52,793 nt of DNA from Selaginella moellendorffii. Lineage: Eukaryota > Plantae > Lycopodiophyta. Below the pieces are notes generated by a model. It saw nothing but the letters and a program-made list of their open reading frames with translations. It was not told the DNA's origin and did not search any database. Location: positions 1 through 52,793 of the forward strand of contig NW_003314444.1 in NCBI RefSeq assembly GCF_000143415.4. The letters run 5' to 3'. Position 1 is the stretch's first letter. Each line of letters starts with the position of its first letter. A program made the position numbers and the translations under genes. Positions 47 to 44,382 of this stretch are shown here, piece after piece.

Positions 47-411
47 CACCGACATCCCATACGTTAAGCTTAAATTTCCACGCAACAAGGAGTTAATATT
101 AAAACCCTGCATCACTATTGTCCTTGTAGCGTTAAAGTAAAAGTGCTCAGGATTTACCTGTGTAGGAACAACATCATAAATAGACTCATTTGTGAGTTTC
201 CTCAATATTGTTGTCTTTCCCGCATTATCTAGTCCAAGAACAAGAATTCGCGCTTCCTTTACACTCAAGCTTTTGATCACCAGACACATTGAGAATGCAA
301 ATTTAGTACCGAGCAGGCCTTCTGCTTGAAAATCCTCTTGAGCAATGCCACTAATCCCTGCACAAAGTAGATCCTTGCTCAGCAACAAGTGCAGGGTTAG
401 TACATTACCAT
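47..411 (-). CDS. ARL3: ADP-ribosylation factor-like 3 (ciliary small GTPase), 5' part; continues off the window; apparent 1-nt frameshift in exon 4
   Basis: Exon 1 is ATG alone (411-409) followed by GTAATG. Exon 2 from 357 reads GLVALLKRIFKQK. Exon 3 (to 158) reads EARILVLGLDNAGKTTILRKLTNESIYDVVPTQ (P-loop). Exon 4 (106-47) reads GFNINSLLRG and then, in a shifted frame, FKLNVWDVG|GTAAGG. PTQGFNI and FKLNVWD favour ARL3 over ARL2. Confidence 0.8.
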
Positions 412-917
412 AGAGGCTATCCTAGATAGGAGATACAGAACCACAGAACAGGATAATGGGCCTCTCAGAACACGTGTCAAAATAGGGTTGGATGCTTTTA
501 TGGTACGGTGGTTACTCTTGGGGAAGGGCTGGCCTTCTCATGGCATGTTGCATCAGCCATTTTATCAGCACTAACTAGAAAATAAGAGGCTGATTGCCTG
601 GAGAGATTTATTTGATTTCATAATATTGTGAATAAAATAATTAAGAATCACAGAGCCATTTGGCTTCCAGATGAAAGAAGGAGGAGATATTCAGACTTCG
701 CCTTTTAGGATGGCGAGTTGATGCTTGAATTCTTGCATGGATTACGTCTAGGCACTGAAAATGCCCTTAGCAAGCGAAGAAAGTCACGCTTGGATCAGAT
801 TCTTTCACCTATGATGAAGCTTCTTTTTCATTATTGCATCTATTTTCTTGGCATTTTCTAAACATAAAAACAAAAAACCATACTCTGCCGCAGATCCCTA
901 AGTGCAGCGTGCCAGTA

Positions 918-3900
918 ATGGAAAACAATGCACCACGGCTCTATGATGTACGAGCTCAAAACCCTCGCAAGACAGGTATTTTAATTTTATCTTTGCAGCA
1001 TCGCATATTGTCCAATAGTACAGATTTGGAGATTAGGGAAATTTTTATCTACGGGGCAGGGCTGCACTCTATTACTTCCATAGTGGGCCTGTCGAGTTTC
1101 AAGAATCTACAGTTCCTGAGCTTACACAACAATCATATCAACAAAATTGAAGGACTGGAAGGACTCTTGTTGCTTAAGGAACTTAATTTGTCCTCCAATT
1201 TTCTTGAGAGCATCGAAGGCTTATCAACTTTAAAAAGCCTTAGGGTTCTCAATCTCTCGTGCAACCGAGTAAAGCAAATAGCAGGCCTGGAATCCCTCGT
1301 TTCGCTGAGCAAGCTTCTTCTGTCACACAACCGTATTTCAAAATTAAGTGGGATATCGGCCAGGTAAGAGGTTCTTTGTTTTGCTGCTAACTGGAATATA
1401 GGTGCAGGCTCACGTATTTAGACTTAAGAGACAATTTTGTGAAATCGTCTGCTGAATTATGGCAACTTGCTGGATGTATTCATCTCAAGGAGCTTTTCTT
1501 TTCACATGGAAAATATACAAATCCCGTCTGTCAGGAAAAATGCTACCATGCAACACTGGCTGCGGCTATTCCACACCTACAATATTTAGATGGGAACCCT
1601 GTGGGAAAGAAAGGAGATGAGAGCAAGGTTTTTCAGGTAAATGACGATTTATTGCCAACAGAGTCCATTCCCTGGAAAGATGACCACGAAAGTCGGCTAG
1701 AAAATATTGAAGCTCGTTTGATGGAAGTACTGGATACTATGAAGAGCACCTCAAATAAAGGCCGCAAGAAAGGCACAGTACGGTTTCCTGTGTCACTGCT
1801 TTATGTTCCTGAACTATTTGACCTTGTAGGATGTCGACCATGCATTAGAAGCACCAAAAATGTGTAAGGAGGTACAACTACATTTTTAATGAGGAACTGA
1901 CTATGATGCGCTTTCCAACAGATTAGTGAGCTTCAAACCGAGGTTACAAATGTTGAGAAGGAACTTTTCAAAAGAAAACATCCAAAAATGGTACATTCAC
2001 CGAACCATGGAGGTAAAGAAAGGGAACACTCACCAGGTCCTGCGAAGGAATGTTTCTTCACGCCTCAGGAAAGACCTAAGGTAAACATGTGGGTTCCGCG
2101 TTACGAAGCTTAGATTTCCAAGGAAAGGACGATGGATCGCGTACTGCCCAACGTATACAGGAGCTCCTTTATGATTCTGAAAGGTCCAAAGCAGAACTAC
2201 TCACCCACCAATCGGAAAATAAAGCTCTAAAAGAGTCACTCGATGTAGCTACCTACTTGCACAAGGTAAGCTCCAACAGTTGCTTGTGTCATTCTATTGT
2301 CTTTTCTTCTTAGAATGCAGAGAGCGCCTTAACAGACGTGACTGCCGAAAAGAAACATATACAGGATGCAATGTCACGCCTAAGAAAATCTTTAGAGGAG
2401 GAGCAAGCAAAACTGAAACTTTGCAGTAACGAGCTGGTACTAAATTTGGTATCTTTTCTTTTATAGTTTTGTCAGCTTTTAGATTAGGATTCGTTCAAAA
2501 GCAAAGAAGCTCTAGCTCACGAGGAGGTTAAAAGACTCTCGAATTTACTGGCAAAAGAACGGAGTGAACGGAAAGAGGAGATCACGCGCTTGAGCCTGTA
2601 AGAAATCACGTAGTATATTTTAACGTTGTTCTTGTTGAGTTGCTCTAGAATGCATGATGAAGAGTTAGCATCTGCTATTGAAAAGGAAAAAGAAGCTGAG
2701 CAGCTACGAATTACGACAAAGTGGAAGAAAGAACTTGAGTACTTACGATGTAACATTCAATCTACTGAAAGAGAACTGGAACTAGCTAATGAAGGTGTGT
2801 CGTTGTTCACTCTTCCTCCCTCACAAATTCATGAACTGCAAACAGAAAGAAAAACAAGTGTAGAACGCACGGAGAAGATACGCATGGAGCTTTCCCGAGA
2901 AAATGCAGATTTGCGAGATGCGTTAAAAACTGTTATCCAAAAGGTGCGTTTCTCAGCTTTGATTTTGAGCTAACGCTTCCTTTGTGTTTAGGAGCAAGAT
3001 GCTGAAGCGCTTCTAGCGGAGCTTACTGTTGTTGTGCACTCACAGGTTCGAGGAAACAGCAAAAGGTACTTGCTGACTTTCATTGCGTGCACAGAAGCTG
3101 AAGCTGCAGTCCACACAAGCTGAAATTGCAGCATCCACTGAGGTATGCATATTACATACACCGAATTCGTAATTTCTTGATCTGCCAGGAAATAGAAACA
3201 CTTAGAGCGGAAGCAGTCTCCTTGAGAAAGAAGGCAGCCATGTCAGATGATATGCTAAACAAATGTATAGAAGCCTCAAAGGCTGGAGACAAAGAACGAC
3301 AAAGTCAAGAACAGTCTCTACGCAATCTTGTTCAGTCTCTCAAGGAGGAAAAAGGAAATCTTAGTACACAGCTCAGTTCCATTTCAGAACAACTTGAAAC
3401 AAGTACTGATGCGGTTCGAATCAAAACAAAAATGCTTGATTGTCAAAATGATAGCATCAAGGAATTGAAGCTCGAACTATCTCAGACAAAAAACGCTTTA
3501 AAGGAGGTGAAGTCTTCGGTGGATCTACTTGAAAATGAGTGGAGCACCAGATTCCGAGATGAAGTTGAGCAGGTGGATTATGCTGTTAAATCTTTTTTCT
3601 TAAATATGCTTCTGCCTAGGGTCGAGCATTAAGGAAAGAAGTATCGGCACAAGATATGGTTATAAATGAGCTTGAAGAAGAAATAAGATTGCAAAAGAAA
3701 TCCTTTCTAACGTTGGAACATGACTACTCCATCCTCAAGAATAAACTAAGTGAAAAGGACGAGATGCTAAGGTATCTGCTATTTCTTGAAACCCGTTAAA
3801 CTTGTAATTCAGATACGTGAAGGAGGAGATAAATCGGGTTAAATCCCTATATGAAAACCGAGAAAAGTCAATCGCGTTAGAAAGAGATAAAGCCAATGAG

Positions 3901-4329
3901 AAGTTTCATTCAACAACCAACGTGGGTCCCTAAACAAAATCTTACGCATTTTATTTTGGTAATTTGTCTAGGAAAAGAAAGAAGTAGAAGAAAAACTAGT
4001 GCATGTCCTGGCTGAGATGGAACATATAAAAGGGGTGAACTTTGAACTTGAGGTACCCGAGAGTTTTCACTTCTCCTTTGCTTAATTAAGATGTGCAGAT
4101 AAGAGAGAGAAATATTGCTACAGCTTTAAAGTTGAAAGACGAGGAGCTGGCGGAATCTTTTTGCAAAGTTTCCCATCTTGAGAATGATCTTAAAGAGCTG
4201 GAGAGGATGAAGGCCTTGTCAACGTCTAAGGCAAGTCCATGCCTGTGACTGACGAAATACCTAACATCAGTCGGAATCCAGGTGAACAAGCTGTCTACAA
4301 TCCTAGATGAATTGCGCGCTGGAAGCTGA
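918..4329 (+). CDS. LRRCC1: Leucine-rich repeat and coiled-coil centriolar/basal-body protein (LRRCC1/VFL1/CLERC family), multi-exon
   Basis: SDS22-type LRRs (LQFLSLHNNHINKIEGLEGL...LKELNLSSNFLESIEGL), then an LRRcap (NPVCQEKCYHATLAAAIPHLQYLDG), then long coiled-coil exons. C-terminal motifs VRIKTKMLDCQNDSIKELK and LKNKLSEKDEMLRYVKEEINRVKSLYENREKSIALERDKA resemble the LRRCC1 C-terminus as recalled. Stop TGA at 4327-4329. Start codon uncertain. Confidence 0.8.
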
Positions 4330-4582
4330 TATAACCATAACAAGCAATACTTGCGGGGTTTTTATTTTTTGTTGTTTGAGCACTTAACGTACAATGAATA
4401 TGCCCCAAGCTTTCGATCCAGGTGATGTTGGATTGCACAATCCCCTGCCCCAAGCAACGTACTGCCACCTGCTCTCTCCTCCCCACTATTTTGTTAGCCA
4501 TTCCACCAAACAGGTGACTGGATTTGTGTGTTGCTCCCCATTTGCGAGAAAATATTAATCTGTGTCAACACCGTTAAGTGTA

Positions 4583-4682
4583 NNNNNNNNNNNNNNNNNN
4601 NNNNNNNNNNNNNNNNNNNNNNNNNNNNNNNNNNNNNNNNNNNNNNNNNNNNNNNNNNNNNNNNNNNNNNNNNNNNNNNNNN
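4583..4682. other. Assembly gap (100 N, probably unsized); hides the IFT52 5' end
   Basis: Run of exactly 100 N. Confidence 0.99.
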
Positions 4683-6496
4683 TTGCCAGAAGGCTTCGAA
4701 GCAAGTTTAAAGTTGTCAATGTGATTCATTCCCTCCCACCTCCCTCCATATGTCACACTGTTTTTCCTGTCAGATACAAAAACTTGCTTTCTTTGGAAAA
4801 TCTGCAAGAAGCTTCTATCATTATATTTGGATGCCCAAGGGAAAAATTCAGCACGGCAGAGGTAAAATCTATGTCCTAATAGACAGAGATAAACCATGAA
4901 ATCAAACCAGATAGACAACTTGCGATCCTATGTAAGCAGTGGTGGTTCAGTGATTTTTCTAAGCAAAGAAGGTGGTGATATCGCCCAAAATACGAATCTA
5001 AACGATTTGACGCAAGAATACGGGATTACAATCAATTCCGATGGAGTGGTGAGGACTTGAATTTATTTAAATGACACAATGGGCCTGTATGTTTTCCAGG
5101 TGCAGACCATTCAGGAAAAGTATTTTCATCCCAAAGAAGTTATGGTGACAGATGGTATCATATGTGAAGAACTGAATGAAGTATTAGTTAATACTCGTCA
5201 TTCAGGTATTTTATTAAACATTTTTTCGTTATAGTTTTCAGGTAGAAGTTTTTGCGGGCGAGAATACAATTCAGATCCAAGGTGCGAACTTCTCCCTTCG
5301 TTCAATAATAATAATAGGATAATTAGCAGGTTTTGGGAGCCTGACGATATTGAATATGATAATTCAAGACAAGAACTTCGATTTCTATACCCATATGGCA
5401 CTACATTAAGCGTTCAAAAACCGGCAACAACCATACTTTCTTCTGGGTTTATGTCTCAACCAGTGCAGTGCTCCATTGGTACTCTCCAAAAAGTCTAGTT
5501 TTCCCTATTTCAATTGAATATTCCAGGAGCATTATGGCAAGGAACCAAAGGCAAAGGACGAGTAGCCGTGACTGGAAGCGTAGCAATGTTTGAGGATGTC
5601 TGGTTAGACAAGGAAGATAACGCTACGCTCTCAGATTTTGTCTTTCTTTGGCTTTATAAAGAAAAGTCACTTGAGGTACAACATTATCTGCAAAGGTCAT
5701 TAACTGTCTTACTTCAGCTGGAAAAAGTGAACATTGAGGAACTGGATGCTAGAGAACTTGAACAAATTCCAAACACAGAAGCTTTAGCTAACCGACTACG
5801 TTGTTGCTTACAAGTAAGGTTTCTCTTGAAGGAATTTCATGTTGAAGTCTTTTCAGGAGGCCGATGATATACCCAAAGACTTTACGCAGCTTCTTAACGA
5901 CAGTCTTTTTAAGTACCACACAGACTTAATACCTGAAACGGGTAATTTGTATAGATCTCTTGGGGTTAAGCATGCTCCTTTGACACTGATCGCACCTCAG
6001 GTATGAGTGGCTTTTTCATTTTACGAAATTGAGAGTGGCTTTTTTTAGTTTGAGACTCCATTACCACCTCTTCAGCCTGCTGTTTTTTCCCCAGTTTTGA
6101 AGGAACCAATGTTACCAGAAACAGACTTATTTGACCTTGACGATTGCTTTGCTTCACCATGTGCAAGACTTGCACAACTAACTAACAAGGTAAGTAATGT
6201 GACTTCAGCTTACTTGTGTTTTCTGTTTTTCACTAAGCACCGCAGTGCAAAGGAGTAGAGCCAGAGGACTTGGTTTTGTATATTCTTGAAGCGGCAGCAA
6301 TAATCGGAATCATGCCAAAGGTTTGAAAGAGTATTTAAACGAGAATGCATTCACAATTCCGATGTTTTAGCAGGTTGTTTGCCATGGTCTGCATTCTAGA
6401 GAGCTGGCAAAATCGAGTTTAACAATCGTATTTGAAGAGATAGTGACAATGAAGAAAACAGGCTTCGATGATTCTCCAAGATTGTTTGGGAAATAA
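4683..6496 (+). CDS. IFT52: Intraflagellar transport protein 52 (IFT-B), 5' end in gap
   Basis: Spliced motifs IIFGCPREKFSTAE, EGGDIAQNTNLNDLTQEYGITINSDGVVQTIQEKYFHPKEVMV, FLYPYGTTLSVQKPA, GKGRVAVTGSVAMFEDVWLDKEDN, LGVKHAPLTLIAPQFETPLPPLQPAVF and LFDLDDCFASPCARLAQLTNK. Stop TAA at 6494-6496. Confidence 0.95.
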
Positions 6497-8632
6497 GTTT
6501 GGATATCTCAATTCATATTTTGCATGTCAATCTTTTCTTTAGAGAAATCAGCTCCAACACGGTTGTATATATTGCCTTACCTTAGCTAAAGCTACAGCGG
6601 AGTGGATTCTTAAGACAAGTAATCATAGATGCATGGTCTCAGTCAAGGTATTTTACCAGTCCTGCTGGGCTCAAAGGAGAGATCCTTTTGAGCTGCTCAG
6701 TCGGGCCTGTGCAGTGGGATAATGGACGAGTGTAGAGGGACAGTTTATGGAGAAGGCCGGGGTTCAGCAAGATTGCTGAAGCTCTGGGTCCAAAAGATGG
6801 TGAACTTGCCTGGTATAGGGGCGATTTATTAAACCATAGAACAGCTAGTGCCCTCTGAAGTTTCCCTCAGGATAGTATAGCTGGAGCTCTTACCGAGTTT
6901 AATCAGATAAAGCGGAAGATTAAAGGCATTGAGGGTGGAACACACTACCTCATACTTTAAATAGGTAAGGCAGCCAGGGTTGCTCCATTGAGCCCCGACT
7001 GCAATGTGGGCCATTGTAGGTTAAGCAGATCTACTGGGTTTGTTGCCGTAGCAGGACTGATGATACAGAAGTAGCGCTACAGTACCAAAGTGTGCGCCTA
7101 ACCCAGATCTCACAAAGGTCTTGATTGATTAATACAGCAGGACAGTGGTCATGGAAGTCTGGTGGGTTTTGTATGACGAATTGGCACTCTGTTTTGATAT
7201 GCTGCTACCTGATGGTGTTCTTGGTATCCAACGACTATAAGAAACCGTTCCAAATTGCTCAACACTTAATCGGTAAGATGCATGTGTAGGCAGAAAATTG
7301 ATATGGGTATATTATCAGTTCAATCACTAAAGGAAATACTTCAAAAGATCAAGCGAGCTAAGACGATTGATGTTGACCAAGGGGAAGATGCTAGCGGCTT
7401 ATGGATGTTAAAAGCTATCATGAATTTCTTGTGTGTTGGAAATGCTAGACTTCCCAGGTGACAGTCACATGAATGTTCAAATGCTTCCAAGTGTGAACAT
7501 CCTGCCTAGACCGCGATCAACAATTAAAAATGTTATATAAATTTTGAGTTCGTATGGGTGCTATATATGGGCTTCCAAGCACCAGCCCAGGGGTTCGTTG
7601 CCTCCAGCAACCTGTGGAGCATAGCTCAGAACATAATGTAAAACGCGAGATTCCAGCTTTATCACGTTGGTCTGGAGGACAATGATCCAGACATGTGCGC
7701 TAGCTGGGATTTCTGATCTACATTAAACCCACCAAGCTACACATTACATAATGCTGTGTGGATCTGGCGCATTGCAAAGAAACAAGAAATTTTATTTTTA
7801 AGCCACTTATACGGCGAGGGCTCCTCCTGGAGGATCCCAGGCCCGGAATCAGGGTCGGGATGCTCCCCGGTCGACCCGGATGAATACCGGGCCCCAAATG
7901 TGCTCAAAAGCTAATGTAATAAGGAATCCTCCCGGGTCCTGTAACACCGTTCTGAGTGCGATTGCTAGATACTGCGAATTAACTACCTTTGAAAATTAAA
8001 ACATGGGGCAATTTTAGTGGTTGGAATATGTAGGATCTTATTTACACTATCACTGCAGCTATGCCAGGTCTTTTTAATAAGCACCAGGATTGGAATGGAT
8101 GCATGACCCCATGAAAAAGTTTCTGGACCGGTGTATGCTATCAAAGATCAGCAGTCACAATTTTGTCCCACAAACTCGATAGAAAATGCTTTCAACTAAG
8201 TAGATACTTAGTAGCCTGAACCAACCCTTTTCTACAACGATGTCCTTTGGCTATGAGTTTCGCTATCCCCTTCTTACTTTACCATCAAAGCCGATGACAT
8301 TCATTGGTGCATATAACATCCTCTACAATGGCCATCGTTAGTTTTATTTAAAATCCGCTACAATGGTCCTAAAGTGTGATGTACGATCCTCCAAACAGAA
8401 GGCCTTCGAACATAATCCTGAATCTGTGAACATTCAATCCACTAAATCGGAATCTGCATTTTGTCAATGTCCAGCATAAAGGACTTAAAGCCATAGGAAT
8501 GTTACCTCTATGATGAGCCAGTTTTCTCTATACACGACACAGATTCACACAAATCTCAAAAACATTGGTACTGCAAAATTAAAAGGAGCTTGTTAGAGCT
8601 TGTTAAAAAATATGTAGTGTTAGTCCTTAGAC

Positions 8633-11600
8633 CTGCAGGAGAAACTGTTATGTTATAAAGTGCCAAAAGCACGTTCTTCCAGGTTATACGAATTGCATAA
8701 TCTCCAGGCACAGAAGCTGCATATGTCACTAGAAATTGTCCGCGATTTGTTGTGTTTTCAACTACTTGTCCTTGTTGTACTACACTAGATCCAACCAATG
8801 ATACAGTCACAAGCAGAAAGGTTGTATTATACCCTTGAAAGTTTCCCACAACAGGCATCCCGTAGTTGTCAATGAGTGTGATGCTAATTGAAGACACACT
8901 CCCGACCTTTGTATTTTGTAATCCCGATCCATCAAAAATGGAAAGTGTACCATTAGGGGGCTCTAAAATAATGATGTCAGCACAAATTTAAAACAAAATA
9001 AAATCGTTACCTTGGATTATAGAAAATATAAACGGTCCCTTATAATGATTCACACCAGCATAACAGTCCAAAGAATAAGTGCCCATCGGTATGATGGTAA
9101 ACCTCATCTCATACCAGTCTGATGGCGTGGCAGTATATATTCTGTATCCGAAGTCCGGGATTTGTAGAAGGGGCCCACTCATGTCAGTACTGTTAAAGAC
9201 GGTGACGTTGAAATTACTGGCGGTAACATTGTTTTGTATAGACAAAACCTGATTACCAAATCTATCCCTTTGATAGACTTGAATCGCAGATTTTTGTCCA
9301 GATGATGTGTAATTTATACCCTGAGGCCAATAACACGAGCACTGTGGAAGTGAAAGGGATCCTGTATACAAAATAGCAAAATCAAATACGAGGCATTCCA
9401 CTTGACAAGGATTACCTGACTGAATGACAACTTTAAATGGGCTACCATTGACTTGTTCAGTTGGAACTATGGTACCTGCCAAAACAGTCATACTGTATGT
9501 ATTTGCCTTCGTAATATTGTACGTCACGTTGAACTTTCCAATGCCAATGCTCGTTATTGTCATGGTCTCCCTTGCAGTAGGAAAAAATGTAACAGAAATG
9601 GCACTACGATTTGCTGTGTCTGTGTTGTTGTAAAAATCCAATACAGTTACTTGGAAAGAAAACATTCTTCCAGCAACACCTCCCGAAATGCCAGCGCCTT
9701 TAGCTGTGCACCATGGTCCGTATATTCCAGCTGTAGTAGGACAGAGCGTAAGCTATTGATCCAGGTTTGAGAAGGAACGCACTTGGTAAAACACTCTTGT
9801 TGACAGCTCCAGCGCCTAGCAGTGCTCCTTTCCAGCTCACCAAAAGTAGATAGTTTCCTATGACGGTGGCAGTATATGTCACTTGAAAAATTCCAGTTGT
9901 TTTAGGTATTGCCGTGATGTTTGCTCCAACTGGAAAAGCTACTCCTTGCATCTTCATTTGAAAGTCCAAGTCTATCACATTTGCTGTTGCTGGATTACCT
10001 GCCACATCTCGAAGCTGGATGAGAAATGTAGACGGTATCCCAGCTGTTGAGTTCTTCAGACCATCACCTTCCATTATGGATCTCGAAGGGGATACGCTAT
10101 CTGTTAACACATCAGAGAGGCATATAGAGACAAAAAGGAAAATAAAACCTGTTGCACCAAATAAAACAAATGGAGAACCCATGATATCATCTGTCTCGTT
10201 GCCAACTTGAAGAATAACTTTTCCAATTGTGTATATAGAGAAGTTCATTATCAAAACATTGGAACTGTATGGTGACACAGTCAGGTCGAATATTGGAATA
10301 AGTGTAAGGTCAGGGTTGTAAAGCGCGGCCGAAAAACTAAGCGGATCAACACTACTGGCCAAAAGAGGATTTCCAAACTTGTCCCGTGGAGTTATCAAAA
10401 AGCTTACAGTCGCATTCTGAGAAAAATACTGTGAACCCGATGGCCGTTCACCGGTGCTCGCGGGTATTGATAGAGGGCCTGAAAACATATGTGTCTCAGC
10501 CATTGAGTTTGCAGTTAGAGATACCTGATTTGACTGTAAATGGGAAAGGTGAACCAGAAATGTTAAGCTTTTTTGTTCCGATCTGCATATAAAAGGTACC
10601 CACAATTGTAGGATAGAAAACTATCAATTGATATCCTGAATAGTTTAGCGATGCCATCATACTCATGTTCCAGTCTTGAATATCAGCAACACCCACCACC
10701 TGAACGTCAAAGGCAGCTATCTCAGATCTTCCGTTTGCAGTACTGACATTGTTTTTGAATTTGTCCACCAACTGAATAGCTAGAACGGATTTTTGTCCAG
10801 CATGAAATGTGTTACGCCCATCAGGCCATATTGCTGTACAGTTGCTAGGAGAGATGACACCTGCAAAACATCAACGCGGTTTTTACTCAAATTAACGACA
10901 TAGCATCCTTACTGGATGATACAGAAAATGTAAACGGGGACATGGATATTGATTCGTTAAATCTCCAAATGTGAAGGAAGAACGATCCCGAAATGGTTGG
11001 TGTAAACTTTACAAGTTGACGCCCACTTTGAGGAATATCAATCGTAGTTATATTAAGCTGTACAATATCCTGTGCACGGCTTAAATTCCATGTCACAGTT
11101 GCTGAAAGCAAAAAGCTTGAATTGTAACCTCCATTTACATTATTGACTGTGTTGTTGAAAATATCTTTGACATATATATCAAAAATAGCATTATCTCCAG
11201 CATAAAATGAGTTTATATTATTGGACCAGCCTCCTATGCATGCTGGGGTCGACGGAAAGCCTAAACAAGACATAAAAGGTAAGAACGGAACTTGATAACA
11301 TCAAGGGGACTCACTTGCATTTACATTGAATGTCAATGGCGAGTTAGCAATGTTTTCTGTTCCACTGCCGATAGCTATCGAAAATTTACCAGCTAAAGTA
11401 GGCACGAAGGATATGATCTGATAGTTTGTGCCAGGAAATTTTTCTACATGGACATTAAAATCTGGAAGATCTATGTCAGAGCTAATAAACTTTACAGCAA
11501 AGCCATAATCATCATAAATGCTTTCATTGTATCGGTCTACTTTGCTAATTGTAAGTGAAGCATTCTTTCCTGCAACAACTTGGTTTCCACTTAACCAGCT

Positions 11601-13539
11601 TGCACGGCAACGTGGAACGTATAGAGGACCTGGTGCAACCAGAACGAAAGAATAAATAAGAATAAAAAGGACAAAAGACTCAACCTGGAAGTACTTGGAA
11701 GGTGAAGGGAGATCCAGTGATGTTATCTGTTAGGTTGCCAATGAAAAGGTTAAATTGTCCGGTCATGTTAGGTGAATGTGTAAATGTCCTATATGCGGAG
11801 CCAATTTCTGGAGGTTGCAGCTGTATGACAGTTTGTGGCATCACTTTTCCATCAGCCATATTTTGAACAAAAGCAATAAATTCGTAAACGTCAATGCTTC
11901 CGGTGGCTAAACTAACGTTGTTCCCATAAGCATCCATTTGTAAAACTAGAAATGTTGCCAGCCCTCCAGTTTGAAAAACTGAATTATAGTTTAACCAGGA
12001 ACCAACACAATCTCGTACTGACACAGGACCTGTATAATTCGTAGATCAAGTCAGCTATGAGAAGAAAGTGAATTAATAACCTGAGACGACGGAAAATGTG
12101 AGAGGAGAGCTTGGCAATTCGACGGTTCCACTTCCAACCCGTACCAAATACTGTCCCGCTTCTATAGGTGTAAATCCAGCCGACCAATAACCAGATGTTG
12201 GGTATGTGAAGTTAAAATTTATCCGGGAAAATGTCCCACTATCAAGAAAGGAAGGGCTTAGTGAAAAATTGGCATTGACAACGCTGTTTCCATATGTATC
12301 CACAAGCATTATCATAACAGAAGCTAAACTTCCAGCTTCAAATGTATTTATCCCACTTGGCCATTTTGCAAAAGAGTCTATTACAGATAAAGGACCTGCG
12401 AACGTGAATGAAGTGAAAAAAAGTTCTACAGCTTCATGATTTCAATGAGTGCCTTACCAGCTATTACATCATACCTAAGCGGGGATTTTTGTACAACTTG
12501 TGAGTTGTTTCCGATTTGTAAGTAAAAAGTGCCAGATAGTTTTGGATAGAATACGACCTTTTGCACTCCCTCATCCAAGTCATAACTTACATTGAAAGTT
12601 TCTTTATATGCTGTTGTATTAGAAGGCACATCATAGATAACACTGAATACAAATTTATAGCCAAAGGCACGTCCTGTCTTGTTGCTCACAGAGTTGTTAA
12701 ATGCATCCTTCTGCATAATATAAAGTGTTGCTGCCGATCCGGCAACGAAAGAATTTGTATCATTAAACCACCAGGCGAAACAGGAAGGAACATGTACAGG
12801 GCCTGAGAACATAAAGTAAATATCAACGAAACGATTGTATAGAGTATATATGTACCCGAAATTATTTTGAGAAAACGTGTGGAAATTGGAACCCATGCTC
12901 CATATGAGAGAATGCTCACGGTCAGCAAGTACTTTACTGCATTATCAGCAGCAAAACTTTGAGCCAAACATGTTACAAAATAATATCCTCCTGAACCAGC
13001 GCTCACATTACAGGATGTAGTAGATGTACTGGAAAAGTCCGAAATTTTGACATCAAAGAAGTTAGCTTGCCCGGTGAATGCTCCACATGTTCCACAAACT
13101 TGCAGATTACAAGTCACGGCACTGACATTGAACATAAAAGGTACTCCTTCGATCAGTGTTTGATTTCCTGGTGAAATGTTGACGACTGAACAATTTCCTG
13201 GTCCTGCAACAGCTGCTTATAAAACTATGAGCTATTTCCTGTTCAAAACTACGTACATGATACGGTTGGCGGTGGCGGTGGGGCAACTAGGGTTATAGAT
13301 CCTGATCTTATGCAACACGATGAAACATTCAAATTTGTTCCAAAGCAGGTGCCATTACATGTGTCGCCAGTGCGAATAGAATTGCATGTAAGGCTGCAAC
13401 AAGTGAAATCGCATTGTGCGCAGTTTAGAGTGCACGAAATATTATTCTGAGGACAAAGCGCCAAGCAATCTCTTCCAGGCTGAGCATTGGCAGTGCCCCG
13501 GAAGACAACCCACAGCCACCAGAGAAACAGTGGCGTCAT
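8633..13539 (-). CDS. GEX2: GAMETE EXPRESSED 2 (GEX2)-like secreted/surface protein with ~11 filamin/Ig-like repeats; 3' end unresolved
   Basis: ATG at 13539 with signal peptide MTPLFLWWLWVVFRGTANA, a Cys-rich domain and a PPPPP hinge. Exons 3-13 each read GP-x-C-x-W-x-F-x-AG...(K/R)D-x-(F/Y)GN...G-x-(F/Y)-x-L-x-(I/V)...GSPF-x-F-x-V, e.g. GPVHVPSCFAWWFNDTNSFVAGSAATLYIMQKDAFNN and SIMEGDGLKNSTAGIPSTFLIQLRDVAGN, matching GEX2 filamin repeats. Approximate exons: 13539-13257, 13213-12857, 12803-12478, 12394-12082, 12029-11686, 11630-11316, 11260-10912, 10860-10526, 10479-10149, 10100-9785, 9731-9416, 9361-9012, 8962-8633. Confidence 0.8.
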
Positions 13540-15562
13540 CTGATTAACTGTAAGCGTTGTTATGTAATGAAAGTCATACTGATGTTTTTTATGCTGTTTT
13601 GCGTTGGACGCCCGATGTAGCAGCCCAAACTGGGATGATGACGTGGCAGGGGATCGGCCATAGGCCAAGGGCACGCCAAGAAGGGAGTTGTGGTTGATGG
13701 GGAGTAGAGGTGCAACCTGAGGGGTGGATCTAGCAAACACTCCATATTCTCTCATAAAGAGAGATCTCTCTCTTTTTTTTTCACATGCCAGGATTCTTCC
13801 AGGGAACGATCGACAGATCAAGCTGGGACAAGGAACCACTCCACTAGACTAGAGACTAGCCTCAACTCAACATACTGTTGAGCACCCAGCTTGGTTGAGG
13901 GGTGTCTTGGCAGTTGTCGCCAAGGCTCACCCTCGCACTCACACATGCCTGAAGCTTTCCACTTCATGTAAAACATGTTTAAAGATCCATTATGTTGGGA
14001 TAAGTTAAGCTGCAAGATTTATGCCTTTATCCCCAGCATGTGACCAACCCATATTTTTGCCATGCCTTTGGTATGGTGAACATCCCTCAATACTCTCTCT
14101 TTCTCCCTTGGCACTTACTCTTGGTGTGGCACTCTTCCTCAATAATGGGTGACTGTGCTTGCAGCTAGGTGATGGCACTAGTGCAAGCAGGTGATGGTGC
14201 TAGGACCAGTAAAGCAAGCAGAGTGATGGCATAGGTGCTCCCACTCCAATCCATTCTAGGGCATTCCCACTCAAATCCAGTCTCAGGTGTTATCTTGGAA
14301 AAACTCAACTTAACCCTAATCTTGGTGGCTAGATTTCGCCCTAAATGTAATATGGGGAGTGAAAGCAGGGCATTGCAGAGCTTGGGTGATGAGGAAGGGA
14401 GAGTGGAGGCAGTGACAGGTGGAGCCACAAGTAGCACCGGTGGCCACAGCTTCAAGCTCCTCTTCTTTCTCTCTTCTCTTGCTTTAGCAATTTGAGGTTT
14501 TTGATCCTAATTGAAATTTCTTTGATTTCTCACCACAGTTGGCACTAGGGATGTTCTCACTAATCTCTTACAGTAGCATGTCAAGAGGATCTAGGATTGA
14601 CAAGATCTGATCGTGTTAAGGCTAGGGTTCTTGGAAGCAAGGTGAGAACTCTTGCTCACAGCTTTTAGGCTGCATTGGAGTGTCTAGCAGGCTTATGGGG
14701 GAAACAAGGCCCCAGCCAAGATCTTTGTGATTCAAGATTGGTCTTGCCCTAGTGTGCTAGGGTTCTTTAGTGGCAACTAGGTGAGCATTGGGGAGCTTGT
14801 AGAAATCAATATGAGGACTTCCTGAAAACAAATCTCTAGCTTTGGTATTGTCAAAGACCATGTGTGGTGCTTGGCTGGGATTCAGGGGAAATGAGAGTGG
14901 ATGATATCTGGATTTGGTGGATGGGATTGCTGCCATAAGTTGGACCAATGGAGGACAGAGGATAGTTAGTGTTGCATGCATGCAGAGGAAATCCGCACTA
15001 GTTTAGGAGGAGGTTGTAGAGGGTCTCAAGATAGAACACTCTAGCTGGAGCTAGAGGAGGTTCACACCTTGCTTTTTACTATGCAATGGAGTTTTTCATT
15101 AAAAAACACTAAGTTGGAGCTTTTCACTACCCTAATATGAGTCTCATATCTCTTGGGGCATAGTGGGTGGCTTTAATTTTCTAGTGGAATCACCCAGGAG
15201 GTGGATGGTATATGAGTAGTGCCTGCTCAGGAGTTTCACCTACTTTTACTATGAAATGCACTCTCAGTTCTTGTTTAGTCCCTTGGAGACACTTATGGAA
15301 TAAATTATTAGTCTAACCTAGTCTTAGTACCATTTATTTTGGTCTATATTGTCTGATTTATATCAGATCTAGTCTAGATTTAACAATTTGATGAAATCTT
15401 TATAAAATCTTTATCTTTGGTGACTTTATTTGTATGACTTTATCTACACTCACATACACTCAATATGTGAGTGTATGTAATCTATCTATATAGTATCTTA
15501 AACCATGTTAAGTCAATTGGGTTGTTAAGTTAGAGAAATGAAGTTTCTAGCAATAAAAAGAA

Positions 15563-15595
15563 CTAGCTGGGATCCCAGCTCCGCTGGGAGAAGTA
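15563..15595 (-). mobile_element. Helitron 3' terminus (hairpin + CTAG)
   Basis: Minus strand reads TACTTCT-CCCAGC-GGA-GCTGGG-ATCCCAG-CTAG|T: a GC-rich hairpin 7 nt before CTAG, followed by T. A near-identical motif occurs at 44927-44960. Confidence 0.75.
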
Positions 15596-16699
15596 CAAAA
15601 TATTTTGGGCACATTGAATTTTCAAGCATTTTAATTTTAATTTCAAAATAATCAGTTGAAAGTTATAGCTGTAAGCTCTAGAAAGCAAGGTTTAATAATT
15701 AACCAAAGCATTTGATGGTAAGAAACTACTAACAGAGAGAAAGAAATGAAAAATCTAGGACATAATAGTGTTAGGCCATAAAATTCAATTTTTTGACGCT
15801 GATAAGTGAGATCTATGAATTTTAGTTTCCTGTTGTGCATACTCGAAAATTTGAGAGTTACAAATCCAGACTGTTATAAAGCAAGAAAGAGCCAGACCAT
15901 ATAAAGTGAAAAAGAGTTGAACTTTTATAAAGTTTTGATGAAGGCAACACAAATACGTGAGATCCAGTGATTCTTTAATCACAAATGCATGGCTTGCACT
16001 CTCCTGCTCTTGGGTTTTGTTTGGCTGAGCGGTGGTGTTGATGGCGGGCTAGAAAGTTCTCGTCTAGGCATCACTTGGTGGACCTGCTGTTGTTGTTGCT
16101 GTCAGCAGCCCGGGAGCTGGAAGCTCACTGCAGTTGCAGTCCTTTCAGCTCTCTTAGGAGATGAATCGTAACATGGCTGTGATTGGAAACGGGATTCCCT
16201 GTTGATGGTGTCATGGGACAACATTGGCACGGTTTGTTTAGTGTAGCACCAGGGAGCATCGGACAGTGCGGCTTGTTTAGTGAGTGATGGGAGCTACTTC
16301 CAGGCGCACAGCCCGAATGGGATTCTCGATGAACTACAGATAGCAGACAAGTCTACGTGCTTAGTGCATTAGAGAGTGAGAGTGTGCTAGAAAAACTTAC
16401 TGTGCATCTGTGAGGTGTGTGTGACTTGCTATAAACAGCCATCCTGGATTTGCTAGAATGCAAACACATGCCTGAAGAACCATCACAATGTTAGTCCTTT
16501 TTTAAAAAAAACAAAGCTCACTGGTTTCTGTTGTATTGATCACGATGCCATTGATTAGCTTCACTGGACTGGAGAAACCTCGCAAGACACCTTGGATTCA
16601 CTTGAATGTTAGAGTACCTGGAGAAGCAGCACATTGGTTTTTTCTTCTGAGCAATACCTGTATTGTTCAGAAATTCTGAACACTCTCTTGCATTTTAGA

Positions 16700-19863: not shown

Positions 19864-20718
19864 GGATTCTATCAAAGCAGCCAGTTGTGTATTCACATGC
19901 AGCATCTTTATGTGAGAGGTGGCCTTTACAAGGAGGTATCTGACACTCGTATTTAAATTCTATCGTATTCTTTGTTCTCAAATCAAGCTTTGATCTAATG
20001 TATCTGGTGCTGGTTGTGTAGGTGAAGGCCACATTGATTGCTGCCTTTAAGAAACTCAAAGGTGGAGATCCTTGCCAAGATGACACGTCCATCAGGCCCA
20101 TGATATCCAAGTCGTCGGCAGCTATAGTGGAGAAGAGCGTGAACAAGGCAGTGAAGGCAGGTGCCAAACTTCTAGTTGGTAGTAAGCAAAGGGGAGCTTT
20201 CATGGAGCCAACGATCCTGGAAGACGCTCCCTTTGACACAGATGCAAGGAAGGAAGAGATTCTCGGTCCCGTGATCCTTCTCTACTCATACAAGTAAGCT
20301 CTCAAAGTTTCTTAGCTCCTAAAGTTCTTATTTACTCTTTTCTCTCTCTCTAAACTAAAACGGTGGTGACACAGTGATTTCAAGGAAGCCGTGAAGGAAG
20401 CTAACAACACACATTACGGTCTCCAAGCCAGCATCTTTATGCATGATCTAAACAAGGCCTTCTATGCGTTTGAGCACATAGAGGTAGCTTTGTGTTTGAG
20501 ATATAGAAAGTATTGATTGTTTGTTTGATGATTATTCGATCTTCACAAGCTGGAGGAGTTTGCCTCAATGATTAGCCAAGCATGCGCATTGATAACCAGC
20601 CATACGGTGGGATCAAAGACTCTGCAATCCAACGAGAGGTGTCAAGTACGTGATGGACGACATGCTCGAAACCAAAGTTTTAGTAATGCGCAATGTAGGC
20701 AATGCGTCTTACTTTTGA
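19864..20718 (+). pseudogene. ALDH21: Aldehyde dehydrogenase family 21 pseudogene, 3' half only (4 exons)
   Basis: Catalytic-Cys region GFYQSSQLCIHMQHLYV, then MEPTILED...EEILGPV, EANNTHYGLQASIF and GGVCLND*PSMRIDNQPYGGIKDS. Premature TAG at 20573-20575, then a 1-nt deletion before VKYVMDDMLETKVLVMRNVG, which matches the moss ALDH21 C-terminus as recalled. The 5' end is cut at the AT-rich junction (~19856). Confidence 0.85.
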
Positions 20719-20799
20719 TCAAGCTCGAGCTCGAGCTTTTGAGAACAGTAAATACAGTCTATCCACAAATGATTGCCAAGTTGTCCTCGTTTGCTAGCT

Positions 20800-28800: not shown

Positions 28801-28801
28801 T

Positions 28802-28900
28802 TGTTATGAACCATCGCAAGAAAATAAAGATCTAGTTTCCCTAGACTATGCTATGCCACCTCTTGAGGTTCCTCACCACCCAACCACCCCCAGCAGACAT
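28802..28900 (-). mobile_element. Fragment of LTR type C 3' end, inverted
   Basis: TGTTATGAACC...CTCTTGAGGTTCCTCACCACCCAACCACCCC is the reverse complement of ~37275-37353 and ~50027-50117. Confidence 0.7.
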
Positions 28901-28960
28901 GGTAAGCTATCATTTAGTGAATATTGAGGGATCAAGTTCAATATCATGGGGGTTCAATAT

Positions 28961-29345
28961 TGAGATGGACCCGAGATGGAGTCCGAGATGGAGTCCGAGA
29001 TGGGGTTTCAGATGGTGTTCGAGATGGACCCGAGATGGAGTCCAAGATGGACCCTAGGTGGACCCGAGATGGAGTCCAAGATGGACCCTAGATGGAGTCC
29101 GAGATGGACCCGAGATGGAGTCCGAGATGGACCCGAGATGGAGTCCGAGATGGAGTCCAAGATGGAGTCCGAGATGGACCCGAGATGGAGTCCGAGATGG
29201 AGTCCAAGATGGACCCGAGATGGAGTCTGAGATGGACCCAAGATGGAGTCCAAGATGGAACTGAGATCGAGACCGAGACTAAGTTTGAGTCTGAAACTAG
29301 GACTGGGATTGAGTCCGAGTCCAAGTTCAAGTCCGAGTCCAAACA
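28961..29345 (+). repeat. Tandem 12-mer array (GAGATGGAGTCC/GAGATGGACCC) grading into GAGTCC-type hexamers, within LTR A
   Basis: More than 20 near-perfect units. This array generates the spurious MESE/PRWS ORFs. Confidence 0.95.
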
Positions 29346-30388
29346 CTAATACAAGCTGTTGGGTGAAAGCCCAAAGCGATCGTCCTCTAGGGGGGAGGGG
29401 GGGGGGGAGGGGGGGGGGGGCTGCGGGGGATTCCAAAAGTATAGTAGGGAGAGTGTGGGGGTTGGAGCCTAGTGGAGCTAGTTTGGCCAGGAAAGGCTAA
29501 TTTGGCCCAGGAAGGCCATACCCAGTGTTGGGTGATGAACTGACCACTGGGAAGTCCAAGACTAGAGTGAATATGGACTGACAAGCGGGGTAGCTTGGTG
29601 AAGTGTTCAAGAGTTGGCTCTAGTTCCCTCGGGAGATCAAATGGTCGATGCTCCCAGTCTAAGTGTGGGTGGCATGACCTACTTGGATACCTGGCGTGGC
29701 TCAATGGAACCTCGCTCTAAGCCCATGGCTAGAGCACCTAAAGGCAGAAGGCAGGGAGAGTACCCACAAGGCTCACGTAAGGCCACGATGTTCCAAAACA
29801 TTGCCCCAAAGTCCCAGGCTGTGAAAAGGAAGAGGAGCCATCCTCTAGGGTAGAGACCAAGGATATGGTCATGTGAGGAGGAAGTCCTAGAGGACCGTGG
29901 GACATAGTGGTCGGGCTTGTGGGCCTCGATCCAATGGCAGTGTTGGTGAACATGGCCATGGGTAGAAAGGGATTCAGTGGGGACCGGAAAAGGGATATTG
30001 GGGAAGGCCATTCCCCATGCCTGCAGGCATCCTAAGGATGCTAAGGAGTGGATCTAGGATGATCAGTCATGGATAGATGGCCCAGTCTTTGAGAGACAGG
30101 GTTGTGATGTAGGTGGTGTCAGACCACCGGTGTGACTAAGGTGAATGGGCATGGCCTTAGCGTAACGGGCTGATATGTCGGTGGTACCTTGGGGTGTCAA
30201 CCATGGGATTTAACACGTGGAGCACTTGGACCAAGTGCAATGTTTAGTGGCATGGATGCTATTCTTGGGGCTAATAAGTCCTTATGTCCAAAACAGGACT
30301 TATGGAGGTTGTGAGTGAGACTCCTCCAAGTGGTCAGAGGTGTGGTTAAGTGACTAAAGTAGAATGGAAAATTTAGTCGCTTACAACT

Positions 30389-30399
30389 TGGTATCAGAG
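30389..30399 (+). other. Primer-binding site (tRNA-iMet)
   Basis: TGGTATCAGAG 3 nt after the LTR-terminal CA. Confidence 0.9.
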
Positions 30400-35030: not shown

Positions 35031-35229
35031 AAGCTAAATTAGTGCACATGAATTTGGAGCTGAACTCCAAGCCTGTTGCACTACAAAACGAGGGTTTGGT
35101 ACAATCCCATGAGCACCAGCTCCCCGTATCTAGCACCTGCATGCAAAATGGTGTTCGATGGTGTTTGGCATAATTTTGGCATACCGGTGGTATAACGCGA
35201 GGAGGAGGGTACCCACCAACTAGAGCAAC

Positions 35230-43106: not shown

Positions 43107-43637
43107 NNNNNNNNNNNNNNNNNNNNNNNNNNNNNNNNNNNNNNNNNNNNNNNNNNNNNNNNNNNNNNNNNNNNNNNNNNNNNNNNNNNNNNNNNNNNNN
43201 NNNNNNNNNNNNNNNNNNNNNNNNNNNNNNNNNNNNNNNNNNNNNNNNNNNNNNNNNNNNNNNNNNNNNNNNNNNNNNNNNNNNNNNNNNNNNNNNNNNN
43301 NNNNNNNNNNNNNNNNNNNNNNNNNNNNNNNNNNNNNNNNNNNNNNNNNNNNNNNNNNNNNNNNNNNNNNNNNNNNNNNNNNNNNNNNNNNNNNNNNNNN
43401 NNNNNNNNNNNNNNNNNNNNNNNNNNNNNNNNNNNNNNNNNNNNNNNNNNNNNNNNNNNNNNNNNNNNNNNNNNNNNNNNNNNNNNNNNNNNNNNNNNNN
43501 NNNNNNNNNNNNNNNNNNNNNNNNNNNNNNNNNNNNNNNNNNNNNNNNNNNNNNNNNNNNNNNNNNNNNNNNNNNNNNNNNNNNNNNNNNNNNNNNNNNN
43601 NNNNNNNNNNNNNNNNNNNNNNNNNNNNNNNNNNNNN
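43107..43637. other. Assembly gap
   Basis: N run. Confidence 0.99.
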
Positions 43638-43804
43638 TTCTATATTACTGTAAGTGGTTAACGTAACGGTGGCTGTTGAAGATGGCTACGTGGCAAACTG
43701 GGAAGCAAAGAATTGCGTCGCTTGAGCTATGTACTGACTGAGCTTCAATTCGAGGGTTGCTCGATGGGTTGGGCTAGTTCGGTGGATTCTGATGCCTCAG
43801 GTCC

Positions 43805-44382
43805 ATGGCCTCCTTCAGCTGCTTCAGGTTTGTACTTGAAGGAAGTTGCACCTTCACACTCGTACGGGTAAATTTTGTATTCAAGTCCTTTTGTGTATAT
43901 CGCAGACGCTGTGGCTCCTCTTGCAGGATAAAAAACGGAAGCTATAAAACTTCAAACAATGAGTATGGAAGATTCTACAATCGTCATGAAACCCCGCCTG
44001 TAAGTTTTGGTCTGTTTTCTTCTTTCGCTAATCTCGCATTTCAGACAAAGAAGGGGCCAGATAATTATTGGTCCAGAAAGTGTGATCTTCTGCATAGGTG
44101 CAATATGAACTGCTTTCAACAGTTGAGAAAGTTTTATCTTGGCCATTGGCCTGGTTTTACAGATGGTAAGCATGTTAAAAGAAAATAGTGAGATGACATG
44201 CAACTAATTTTGCAGATTTTCTCATAACATCAAACTACTCAAGTGCAAAGAACAGAGAGTGGCTAGAACACAAGATTCCATGGAGGACAAACACGGAGAG
44301 TTGGCAAAAGTCTTCGTCAAAACGTTCCAGGAACAGATTCCCACAGGACAGGTTGTCATCCAGAAAGTACTCTTTCTTTTAA
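43805..44382 (+). CDS. Small spliced protein resembling PIERCE1/2 (FAP182, DUF4490) ciliary microtubule inner protein
   Basis: GT-AG exons 43805-43827, 43906-43999, 44045-44165 and 44216-44382 join in frame to a TAA. Core YKTSNNEYGRFYNRHETPPTKKGPDNYWSRK parallels the recalled PIERCE1 motif [32 protein letters not shown]. Confidence 0.5.

What the first reader, a model, noticed from the sequence alone, without database searches (positions are those of the whole stretch)
47..44382. Candidate male-gamete (cilium + sperm adhesion) gene cluster: ARL3 - LRRCC1/VFL1 - IFT52 - GEX2-like ... PIERCE-like
Seen: four non-homologous genes are packed into 13.5 kb, and a fifth lies just past the TE island. 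Established: ARL3 releases lipidated ciliary cargo, LRRCC1/VFL1 sets basal-body asymmetry, IFT52 is core IFT-B, PIERCE/FAP182 is a doublet-microtubule inner protein, and GEX2 mediates gamete attachment and is a DUO1 target in Arabidopsis. In land plants cilia exist only in sperm, so all five would act in one cell type. Inference: this may be a co-regulated sperm-gene neighbourhood or chromatin domain of unrelated genes, which is not a described cluster type in plants to my knowledge. The only other recognisable host genes here (ALDH21, SDR, CFIm25) are broken TE-associated fragments.
Basis: partly seen in the sequence, partly recalled or inferred. Interest (0 to 1): 0.85.

Follow-up and report, generated by a model that had tools for sequence, protein, structure and literature searches.

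The report
Sperm-gene neighbourhood in a spikemoss
In the spikemoss Selaginella moellendorffii, three genes for building the sperm's flagella and one gamete-adhesion gene lie side by side in 13.5 kb; this is unlikely by chance, but it is absent from four bryophytes and the genes have not been shown to be switched on together.

Summary
The window is the first 52.8 kb of S. moellendorffii scaffold GL377748.1, an alternative-haplotype scaffold.

**Confirmed**
- Four genes are real: ARL3 (cut by the scaffold end), an unannotated LRR plus coiled-coil gene with LRRCC1/VFL1 architecture, IFT52, and a GEX2-family gene with about 11 Ig domains.
- The other haplotype (GL377582.1) carries ARL3, the LRR gene and IFT52 in the same order.
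- The 100-N gap corresponds to 177 bp in the other haplotype. It hides only the IFT52 start codon, exon 1 and intron 1, so there is no misjoin.

**Not confirmed**
- LRRCC1 orthology could not be established.
- The "PIERCE-like" gene has no support from Pfam, PDB sequences or the ESM Atlas. It has only a short SNYG motif, whose core occurs at chance frequency.

**Against or limiting the interpretation**
- IFT52 has no ARL3, LRR or GEX2 neighbour within 10 kb in Marchantia, Physcomitrium, Sphagnum or Calypogeia.
- In the other haplotype, transposon-bearing DNA, not GEX2, follows IFT52.
- No DUO1 motif or shared promoter word was found.
- Three RNA runs gave zero reads with no positive control, so expression is untested.

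Under random gene order, three adjacent ciliary genes have P of about 0.02 to 0.34. With a flanking sperm gene, P is at most 0.02.

The scan had already flagged this trio on the other haplotype, and several other flagellar clusters in this genome. Co-regulated male-reproductive clusters are already described in Arabidopsis.

The parts
47..411 (-). 5' part of ARL3. It comprises a coding exon at 158-288 (the annotated model reaches 411) and exon 2 at 47-107. The rest of the gene lies beyond the scaffold start.
   Evidence: Pfam Arf, E 1e-11. ARL3 chains are the best PDB matches for two separate exon sets. The allele on L001 is annotated as an intact 182-aa Arf protein. The window allele has a 1-bp deletion in exon 2.
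412..917 (.). Divergent intergenic region of about 0.5 kb between the ARL3 and LRR-gene coding starts. It is a candidate bidirectional promoter.
   Evidence: Gene coordinates. It differs from the other haplotype by 1.9% plus indels. It has no RRCSGTT site.
918..4248 (+). LRR plus long coiled-coil gene with LRRCC1/VFL1-like architecture. It is not annotated as a gene of its own in GCA_000143415.2.
   Evidence: LRR_4, E 7.5e-18. An uninterrupted spliced ORF path exists. Between haplotypes there are 14 synonymous and 12 non-synonymous codon changes and no indels in 1.8 kb of coding sequence. Orthology is not resolved.
4583..4682 (.). Assembly gap of 100 N. The true content is about 177 bp holding the IFT52 ATG, exon 1, intron 1 and the start of exon 2.
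   Evidence: blastn collinearity with L001. L001 13687-13863 reads as the start of the IFT52 coding sequence.
4683..6496 (+). IFT52, from exon 2 to the stop codon.
   Evidence: Pfam IFT52_GIFT, IFT52_central and Itf52_C. tblastn with Sphagnum IFT52 covers residues 42-452. Exons are identical to the S. moellendorffii protein P0166.
7849..13539 (-). GEX2-family gene. It has a signal peptide, a Cys-rich head and about 11 Ig_GEX2_N/Filamin domains, mostly one domain per exon.
   Evidence: Pfam PF23616 down to E 2.8e-24, and PF00630. An annotated 1113-aa product carries PF23616. The ATG is at 13539. No hydrophobic anchor was found downstream of the last Ig exon.
43805..44382 (+). Candidate small four-exon gene of about 128 aa with one SNYG-type motif. 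PIERCE identity is not supported.
   Evidence: Consensus splice sites were read directly from the sequence. There are no Pfam, PDB or Atlas matches. The motif core occurs at chance level.

Best explanation
This is a real juxtaposition of sperm genes, specific to Selaginella or at least absent from the bryophytes checked.

**Shown**
- ARL3 (-), an LRR/coiled-coil gene (+) and IFT52 (+) occupy about 6.5 kb in the same order on both haplotypes.
- In this haplotype a GEX2-family gene converges on IFT52, with about 1.4 kb between their 3' ends.

**From established knowledge**
- ARL3 and IFT52 act only in cilia.
- In land plants, cilia exist only in sperm.
- GEX2 is expressed in differentiating Marchantia sperm (PMC6290024).
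- The genes are therefore expected to be active in the same spermatogenous cells and silent elsewhere.

**Inferred**
- The spacing forces regulatory DNA to be shared. ARL3 and the LRR gene are head to head, about 0.5 kb apart, which suggests a bidirectional promoter.
- IFT52 starts about 0.36 kb after the LRR gene's stop, so its promoter overlaps the neighbour's 3' end.
- The trio probably behaves as one small unit that opens once in spermatogenesis. This resembles the chromatin-level male-reproductive clusters of Arabidopsis, which also lack common promoter motifs.
- Whether the adjacency was selected, or is a tolerated accident of a compact genome, is not shown.
- GEX2 is a looser member, and PIERCE should be dropped.
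For: - Gene identities.
- The trio is collinear on the second haplotype, and the gap is resolved.
- The unannotated LRR gene is under purifying selection: 14 synonymous to 12 non-synonymous changes, no coding indels, and indels only outside coding sequence.
- Random-order simulation gives P(>=1 ciliary triple) of 0.02-0.34 and P(triple plus flanking sperm gene) of 0.0003-0.02.
- Earlier notes of this scan report other flagellar clusters in the same genome, including a second GEX2-like gene beside IFT122. I did not check these.
- There is precedent for motif-poor, chromatin-level male clusters (PMC5389543).
Against: - There are no expression data. Three RNA runs gave zero reads and had no positive control.
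- No RNA run in the index holds the stretch.
- There is no RRCSGTT site in any of the four upstream regions, and no shared 8-mers.
- No ARL3, LRR or GEX2 homologue lies within 10 kb of IFT52 in Marchantia, Physcomitrium, Sphagnum or Calypogeia.
- In the other haplotype the 8.5 kb after IFT52 carries a Harbinger-type transposase and no GEX2, so tight GEX2 linkage is dispensable.
- With a large ciliome of 600 genes, one triple by chance has P of about 0.34.
- LRRCC1 orthology is unproven.
Confidence: 0.5

Rival explanations
1. The arrangement is a chance juxtaposition. S. moellendorffii packs about one gene per 5 kb, and with several hundred ciliary genes a run of three can arise without any regulatory or selective meaning. 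The genes are co-expressed only because each is independently sperm-specific.
For: - P(>=1 triple) is up to 0.34 for a ciliome of 600 genes.
- There is no shared motif and no DUO1 site.
- The order is not conserved in four bryophytes.
- GEX2 spacing is polymorphic between the haplotypes.
Against: - A triple plus a flanking sperm gene has P <= 0.02.
- Three or more triples in one genome has P <= 0.012.
- The scan's notes list several further flagellar clusters here (unchecked).
- The head-to-head and 0.36-kb spacings make fully independent regulation hard.
Confidence: 0.35
2. The LRR gene and IFT52 form one read-through or polycistronic-like transcription unit, and ARL3 is driven from the same bidirectional promoter. 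The trio would then be a single transcriptional unit rather than a chromatin domain.
For: - Only about 360 bp separate the LRR gene's stop from the IFT52 ATG.
- NCBI's model XP (P0185) fuses exons of the LRR gene to IFT52.
Against: - The fused model skips the LRR repeats and uses wrong-frame pieces, so it looks like a prediction error.
- No transcript evidence was obtainable.
- Polycistronic nuclear mRNAs are rare in land plants (own knowledge).
Confidence: 0.1
3. The neighbourhood is an assembly artefact, produced by a misjoin at the 100-N gap or by haplotype mixing.
For: - The scaffold is a short 132-kb alternative-haplotype piece with several gaps.
- ARL3 sits at the scaffold's very end and carries a 1-bp deletion.
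Against: - An independently assembled 2.45-Mb scaffold has the same three genes in the same order.
- That scaffold has 177 bp of IFT52 5' sequence exactly where the gap lies.
Confidence: 0.03

Closest known systems
MS1-dependent physical clusters of co-regulated stamen genes in Arabidopsis thaliana (Reimegard et al. 2017, PMC5389543)
   Same: Both are small groups of 3 to 8 adjacent, non-homologous genes that act in male reproduction. Neither has common promoter motifs. The proposed control is at chromatin level.
   Different: The Arabidopsis clusters were defined from expression data and are sporophytic (tapetum and stamen). They were tested by qRT-PCR, FISH and mutants. The Selaginella cluster is gametophytic (sperm cilium and gamete adhesion), was defined from sequence only, and has no expression evidence.
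Testis- or sperm-specific gene neighbourhoods of animals (Drosophila co-expression clusters, e.g. PMC2266709; own knowledge for testis clusters)
   Same: Unrelated genes used in one male germ-cell type lie next to each other.
   Different: The kingdom is different. The animal clusters are larger and rest on genome-wide statistics, which are missing here.
Bidirectional (head-to-head) gene pairs with a shared promoter
   Same: ARL3 and the LRR gene diverge from about 0.5 kb of shared upstream DNA.
   Different: Shared promoter activity is inferred from the spacing and has not been measured.
Plant metabolic (biosynthetic) gene clusters (review PMC8418127)
   Same: Non-homologous genes for one process are co-located in a plant genome.
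   Different: The products here are structural and trafficking proteins of an organelle, not enzymes of one pathway. There is no evidence of selection for co-inheritance.

Membership tests
ARL3 (Arf-like GTPase 3) | Arf-family G domain that is closer to ARL3 than to ARL2 or other Arf proteins | tested here: met
   Pfam Arf. In the PDB search, ARL3 chains rank first for the window exon (37 vs 31 bits for ARL2). They also rank first for the allelic exons 1-2 (52 vs 47 bits). They are the only hits for a later allelic exon. The margins are modest and no tree was made.
ARL3 (Arf-like GTPase 3) | Intact full-length coding sequence | tested here: not met
   The window holds only two exons because the scaffold ends. 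The window allele has a 1-bp deletion in exon 2. The allele on GL377582.1 is annotated as intact at 182 aa.
LRRCC1 / VFL1 | N-terminal SDS22-type LRRs, a linker, and a long C-terminal coiled coil (architecture as in PMC8983040) | tested here: met
   LRR_4/LRR_8 at the N-terminus. The downstream exons are coiled-coil-like with weak ATG16/Leu_zip hits. The crude ORF path is 691 aa and skips some exons.
LRRCC1 / VFL1 | Reciprocal-best orthology to LRRCC1/Vfl1p rather than to other LRR proteins such as DRC3, PPP1R7, DNAAF1 or CEP72 | tested here: inconclusive
   In the Atlas, generic LRR clusters rank first and an LRRCC1-like cluster ranks fifth at 0.97, alongside PPP1R7 and DNAAF1. The exon search returned only unnamed LRR fragments. 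PDB hits are generic, and DRC3 reaches only 62 bits. A full-length search needs the joined model, which was left out.
IFT52 | GIFT domain, IFT52 central domain and C-terminal domain, in that order | tested here: met
   PF23355, PF23352 and PF21178. The gene aligns with residues 42-452 of Sphagnum IFT52. NCBI and UniRef name the relatives IFT52.
GEX2 (GAMETE EXPRESSED 2) | Extracellular Ig_GEX2_N and filamin-type Ig repeats behind a signal peptide | tested here: met
   PF23616 scores up to 86 bits against a cutoff of 27, in 8 or more exons, together with PF00630. An N-terminal hydrophobic leader and a Cys-rich head were read from the sequence.
GEX2 (GAMETE EXPRESSED 2) | C-terminal transmembrane anchor, as in Arabidopsis GEX2 (own knowledge) | tested here: not met
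   No 19-residue window with Kyte-Doolittle mean >= 1.7 occurs in any minus-strand frame of 7000-8990. Only weak candidates appear at >= 1.2 across 6500-8990. The test is crude because the 3' exons are not defined by transcripts.
GEX2 (GAMETE EXPRESSED 2) | One-to-one orthology and sperm-specific expression | not testable with these tools
   The scan's notes list several GEX2-like genes in this genome. No RNA evidence was obtained.
PIERCE1/2 / FAP182 | Match to the PIERCE (DUF4490) profile or to solved PIERCE/FAP182 chains | tested here: not met
   There is no Pfam hit even at E <= 10. There is no PDB sequence hit at E <= 10. The best Atlas score is 0.83, to unnamed clusters.
PIERCE1/2 / FAP182 | SNYG motif [ST]-N-x-x-[ILVY]-G (PMC10973386) | tested here: inconclusive
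   One copy is present in a well-spliced exon. However, the motif is shared by about ten microtubule inner protein (MIP) families, and it occurs 8 times in the window against 7.6 by chance.
Co-regulated physical gene cluster | Adjacency of non-homologous genes beyond chance | tested here: inconclusive
   The simulation gives P of 0.02-0.34 for a triple and <= 0.02 for a triple plus a sperm gene. The result depends on an assumed ciliome size, and no genome-wide test was possible.
Co-regulated physical gene cluster | Correlated expression of the members | not testable with these tools
   No RNA run in the index holds the stretch. Three raw RNA runs gave zero reads without a positive control.
Co-regulated physical gene cluster | Conservation of the arrangement in relatives | tested here: not met
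   The arrangement is absent within 10 kb either side of IFT52 in four bryophytes. Ferns were uninformative. Other lycophytes could not be reached. It is conserved between the two haplotypes for the trio only.

The most novel reading that the evidence does not exclude
S. moellendorffii arranges a sizeable share of its sperm-only genes (cilium, basal body and gamete adhesion) into many small neighbourhoods across the genome. These would be opened together in the few spermatogenous cells and kept silent in the sporophyte. This locus is one of them, and a second GEX2-like gene beside IFT122 is another. That would be a plant counterpart of animal testis-gene clusters, evolved within lycophytes.
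Probability: 0.25. Interest if true: 0.7.

Novelty: new member of a known kind. Interest (0 to 1): 0.45.

Why it matters
How a plant switches on several hundred cilium genes in a single short-lived cell type is poorly understood. DUO1 is needed in Marchantia, but its direct targets are few.

If ciliary and gamete-recognition genes are physically grouped in Selaginella, two things become testable. One is small shared promoters such as the 0.5-kb ARL3/LRR-gene region. The other is a genome-wide hypothesis of chromatin-level control of spermatogenesis in an early vascular plant.

On the practical side, this work shows three annotation problems at the locus:
- An LRR/coiled-coil centriole-type gene is unannotated.
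- The RefSeq IFT52 model is a chimera.
- The IFT52 start lies inside an assembly gap.

Tried and rejected
**Expression**
- The look-up of sequencing runs found no RNA holder.
- Read laying on three 2026 RNA runs and one contig set gave zero reads over 1-6000. There was no positive control, so this counts as no test.

**LRRCC1 orthology**
- The Atlas, an exon-level homology search and PDB searches returned only generic LRR matches.

**PIERCE**
- Pfam at E <= 10, PDB at E <= 10 and the Atlas were all blank.

**Synteny in lycophytes and ferns**
- Two Diphasiastrum isoforms are not on record.
- An exon-level search for other Selaginella contigs found nothing usable.
- Ferns are uninformative because IFT52 spans 34-76 kb there.
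- Three look-ups were lost on non-longest isoforms.

**Promoter signals**
- The DUO1 motif RRCSGTT is absent from all four upstream regions. Power is low, because the window-wide density is only 0.23 per kb.
- Shared k-mers among promoters were at chance level.

**A correction to my own reading**
- I first read the pre-gap frame as IFT52 exon 1. The other haplotype showed that the real exon 1 lies inside the gap.

**Rejected explanations**
- Misjoin at the gap.
- An ancestral land-plant synteny block.


Full report
**Where the window comes from.** A protein search seeded with an IFT52 exon led to two S. moellendorffii IFT52 proteins. Looking up where they are encoded returned two loci of assembly GCA_000143415.2. 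Locus L002 is GL377748.1:1-16326 and is letter-for-letter identical to window 1-16326. The window is therefore the first 52.8 kb of a 132-kb scaffold. Locus L001 is GL377582.1:929501-955464, reversed, from a 2.45-Mb scaffold. It is the same region at 95-97% identity, which makes it the second haplotype of this heterozygous assembly.

**The gap, tested first.** Window 3-4582 aligns to L001 9099-13686 at 97.4% identity. Window 4683-8309 aligns to L001 13864-17450 at 95.0%. The 100 N therefore stand for 177 bp. In L001 those bases read as an ATG, a 24-codon first exon, a short GT-AG intron, and the beginning of the exon that continues directly after the gap in the window. The same residues appear in the NCBI protein P0185. 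The gap hides the IFT52 start and nothing else, so a long interval or misjoin is excluded. The other three gaps could not be tested. Gap 21378-21614 lies inside a tandem array of about 354 bp with 100% identical copies on both sides, which probably caused it. Gap 43107-43637 lies directly upstream of the PIERCE-like ORF.

**The genes.**
- **ARL3 (-).** Two exons are present, at 158-288 and 47-107, and the gene then runs off the scaffold start. Pfam calls it Arf. Among solved structures, ARL3 ranks above ARL2 for the window exon, for allelic exons 1-2, and alone for a later allelic exon. The allele on L001 is annotated as an intact 182-aa Arf protein. The window allele lacks one A in a run of four, which shifts the frame of exon 2. 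This is either a real null allele or an end-of-scaffold sequencing error.
- **LRR/coiled-coil gene (+, 918-4248).** It has N-terminal LRR_4 repeats followed by long coiled-coil-like exons. No gene is annotated here on this scaffold. On the other haplotype, pieces of it are fused to IFT52 in a chimeric model. A spliced, stop-free path exists. Between haplotypes, 1.8 kb of confident coding sequence shows 14 synonymous and 12 non-synonymous codon changes and no indels, while the flanking non-coding DNA carries many indels. It is therefore a constrained, functional gene. Its architecture matches the description of LRRCC1 in PMC8983040. Orthology could not be established, because every search returned generic SDS22-type LRR matches. 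I rate LRRCC1/VFL1 at about 60%. Most other LRR plus coiled-coil candidates are also ciliary or centriolar (own knowledge).
- **IFT52 (+, gap to 6496).** All three Pfam domains are present. It aligns with residues 42-452 of Sphagnum IFT52.
- **GEX2-family gene (-, 13539-7849).** It has a hydrophobic leader, a Cys-rich head and about 11 Ig_GEX2_N/Filamin domains. The annotated product has 1113 aa. I found no C-terminal membrane anchor by hydropathy.
- **PIERCE-like ORF (43805-44382).** It has four exons with textbook splice sites and one S-N-N-E-Y-G motif. It has no profile, PDB or Atlas support. The SNYG core is shared by about ten inner-protein families (PMC10973386) and occurs at chance frequency in the window. 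It may be a small microtubule inner protein, but calling it PIERCE is not justified.

**Layout.** ARL3 and the LRR gene are head to head, with about 0.5 kb between their coding starts. IFT52 starts about 0.36 kb after the LRR gene's stop. IFT52 and GEX2 converge, with about 1.4 kb between their 3' ends. On the second haplotype the trio is the same, but homology stops at window 8309. The next 8.5 kb there hold a Harbinger-type DDE transposase and no GEX2 exon. A note from the scan places a GEX2-like gene near that trio (unchecked), so it probably lies further on. Beyond ARL3, that haplotype has an 82-aa ORF of no known family and a weak AP5Z1-like gene. The cluster therefore ends there.

**Is it more than chance?** I simulated random gene order with 22,285 genes, the published gene number as I recall it. 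A run of three ciliary genes somewhere in the genome has P of 0.02, 0.12 or 0.34 for ciliomes of 200, 400 or 600 genes. A triple with a flanking sperm gene has P of 0.0003-0.02. Three or more triples has P <= 0.012. On its own, the trio is suggestive and the four-gene run is unlikely. The scan's earlier notes list this trio on the other haplotype and at least three further flagellar clusters in the same genome, one of them with another GEX2-like gene beside IFT122. These are unchecked AI notes, and some may be allelic pairs. If they hold, the pattern is genome-wide.

**Is it conserved?** No ARL3, LRR-gene or GEX2 homologue is detectable within 10 kb either side of IFT52 in Marchantia polymorpha, Physcomitrium patens, Sphagnum fallax or Calypogeia fissa (tblastn, E <= 0.01). 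The annotated neighbours there are TMEM18, a GH2 beta-galactosidase and a Kelch protein. Ferns are uninformative, and other lycophytes could not be reached. The arrangement is therefore not ancestral to land plants.

**Is it co-regulated?** This could not be tested. No RNA run in the index holds the stretch, and three raw RNA runs gave zero reads with no control. The DUO1 consensus RRCSGTT (PMC6290024) is absent from all four upstream regions, and no 8-mer is shared among them. This is weak negative evidence, and the Arabidopsis male clusters also lack common motifs. In Marchantia, DUO1 is required for flagella but does not control GEX2, which cuts against a single DUO1 regulon spanning both cilium and adhesion genes.

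**Verdict.** The interpretation remains a reasonable but untested hypothesis. The kind of cluster proposed is already known in plants (PMC5389543). A flagellar or sperm version was not found in the literature searched.

Noticed in passing
window 74-78 (ARL3 exon 2, minus strand): There is a 1-bp deletion in an A4 run relative to the other haplotype. It shifts the ARL3 reading frame 75 bp from the scaffold end. It is either a null allele or an end-of-scaffold sequencing error.
   Followed up: partly
L001 10001-15964 (GL377582.1); window 918-6810: The NCBI model named 'intraflagellar transport protein 52 homolog' (P0185, 571 aa) is a chimera. It joins the N-terminus and out-of-frame pieces of the upstream LRR/coiled-coil gene to IFT52, and it adds spurious 3' exons. 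The LRR gene has no model of its own on either haplotype.
   Followed up: yes
L001 17451-25964: There is a haplotype-specific block after IFT52. It contains a Harbinger/PIF-type DDE_Tnp_4 transposase fragment (20011-20247) and a Gly-rich repeat ORF. It replaces the position where the window has GEX2. The breakpoint, at window 8309, falls inside the annotated 3' part of GEX2.
   Followed up: partly
window 20793-22381: A unit of about 354 bp is repeated in tandem, with copies 96-100% identical, around the 237-N gap. It has no Pfam hit.
   Followed up: partly
window 20022-20294 (+): This is an isolated aldehyde-dehydrogenase fragment (Pfam Aldedh positions 287-380 of 461, E 6e-19). It lies next to DNA of 22-30% GC, which is consistent with a gene fragment.
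   Followed up: partly
window 47972-48157 (-): There is a weak CFIm25-type NUDIX_2 match (E 1e-4, profile positions 146-172 of 188). I did not determine whether further exons make an intact gene 3.6 kb from the PIERCE-like ORF.
   Followed up: no
window 24570-25280 and 28840-29500: Long stop-free frames made of short peptide-like repeats occur on both strands, in strongly GC-skewed DNA. Related copies occur on L001 at 2091-3816. This looks like a minisatellite inside a repeated element.
   Followed up: no
Ceratopteris richardii IFT52 locus (no DNA held): A 117-aa gene with no Pfam family starts 163 bp after the end of IFT52 on the same strand. It was not examined.
   Followed up: no
L001 8204-8449 (-): An annotated 82-aa gene lies directly downstream of ARL3 on the other haplotype, just outside the window. 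It has no Pfam family and a hydrophobic composition.
   Followed up: partly
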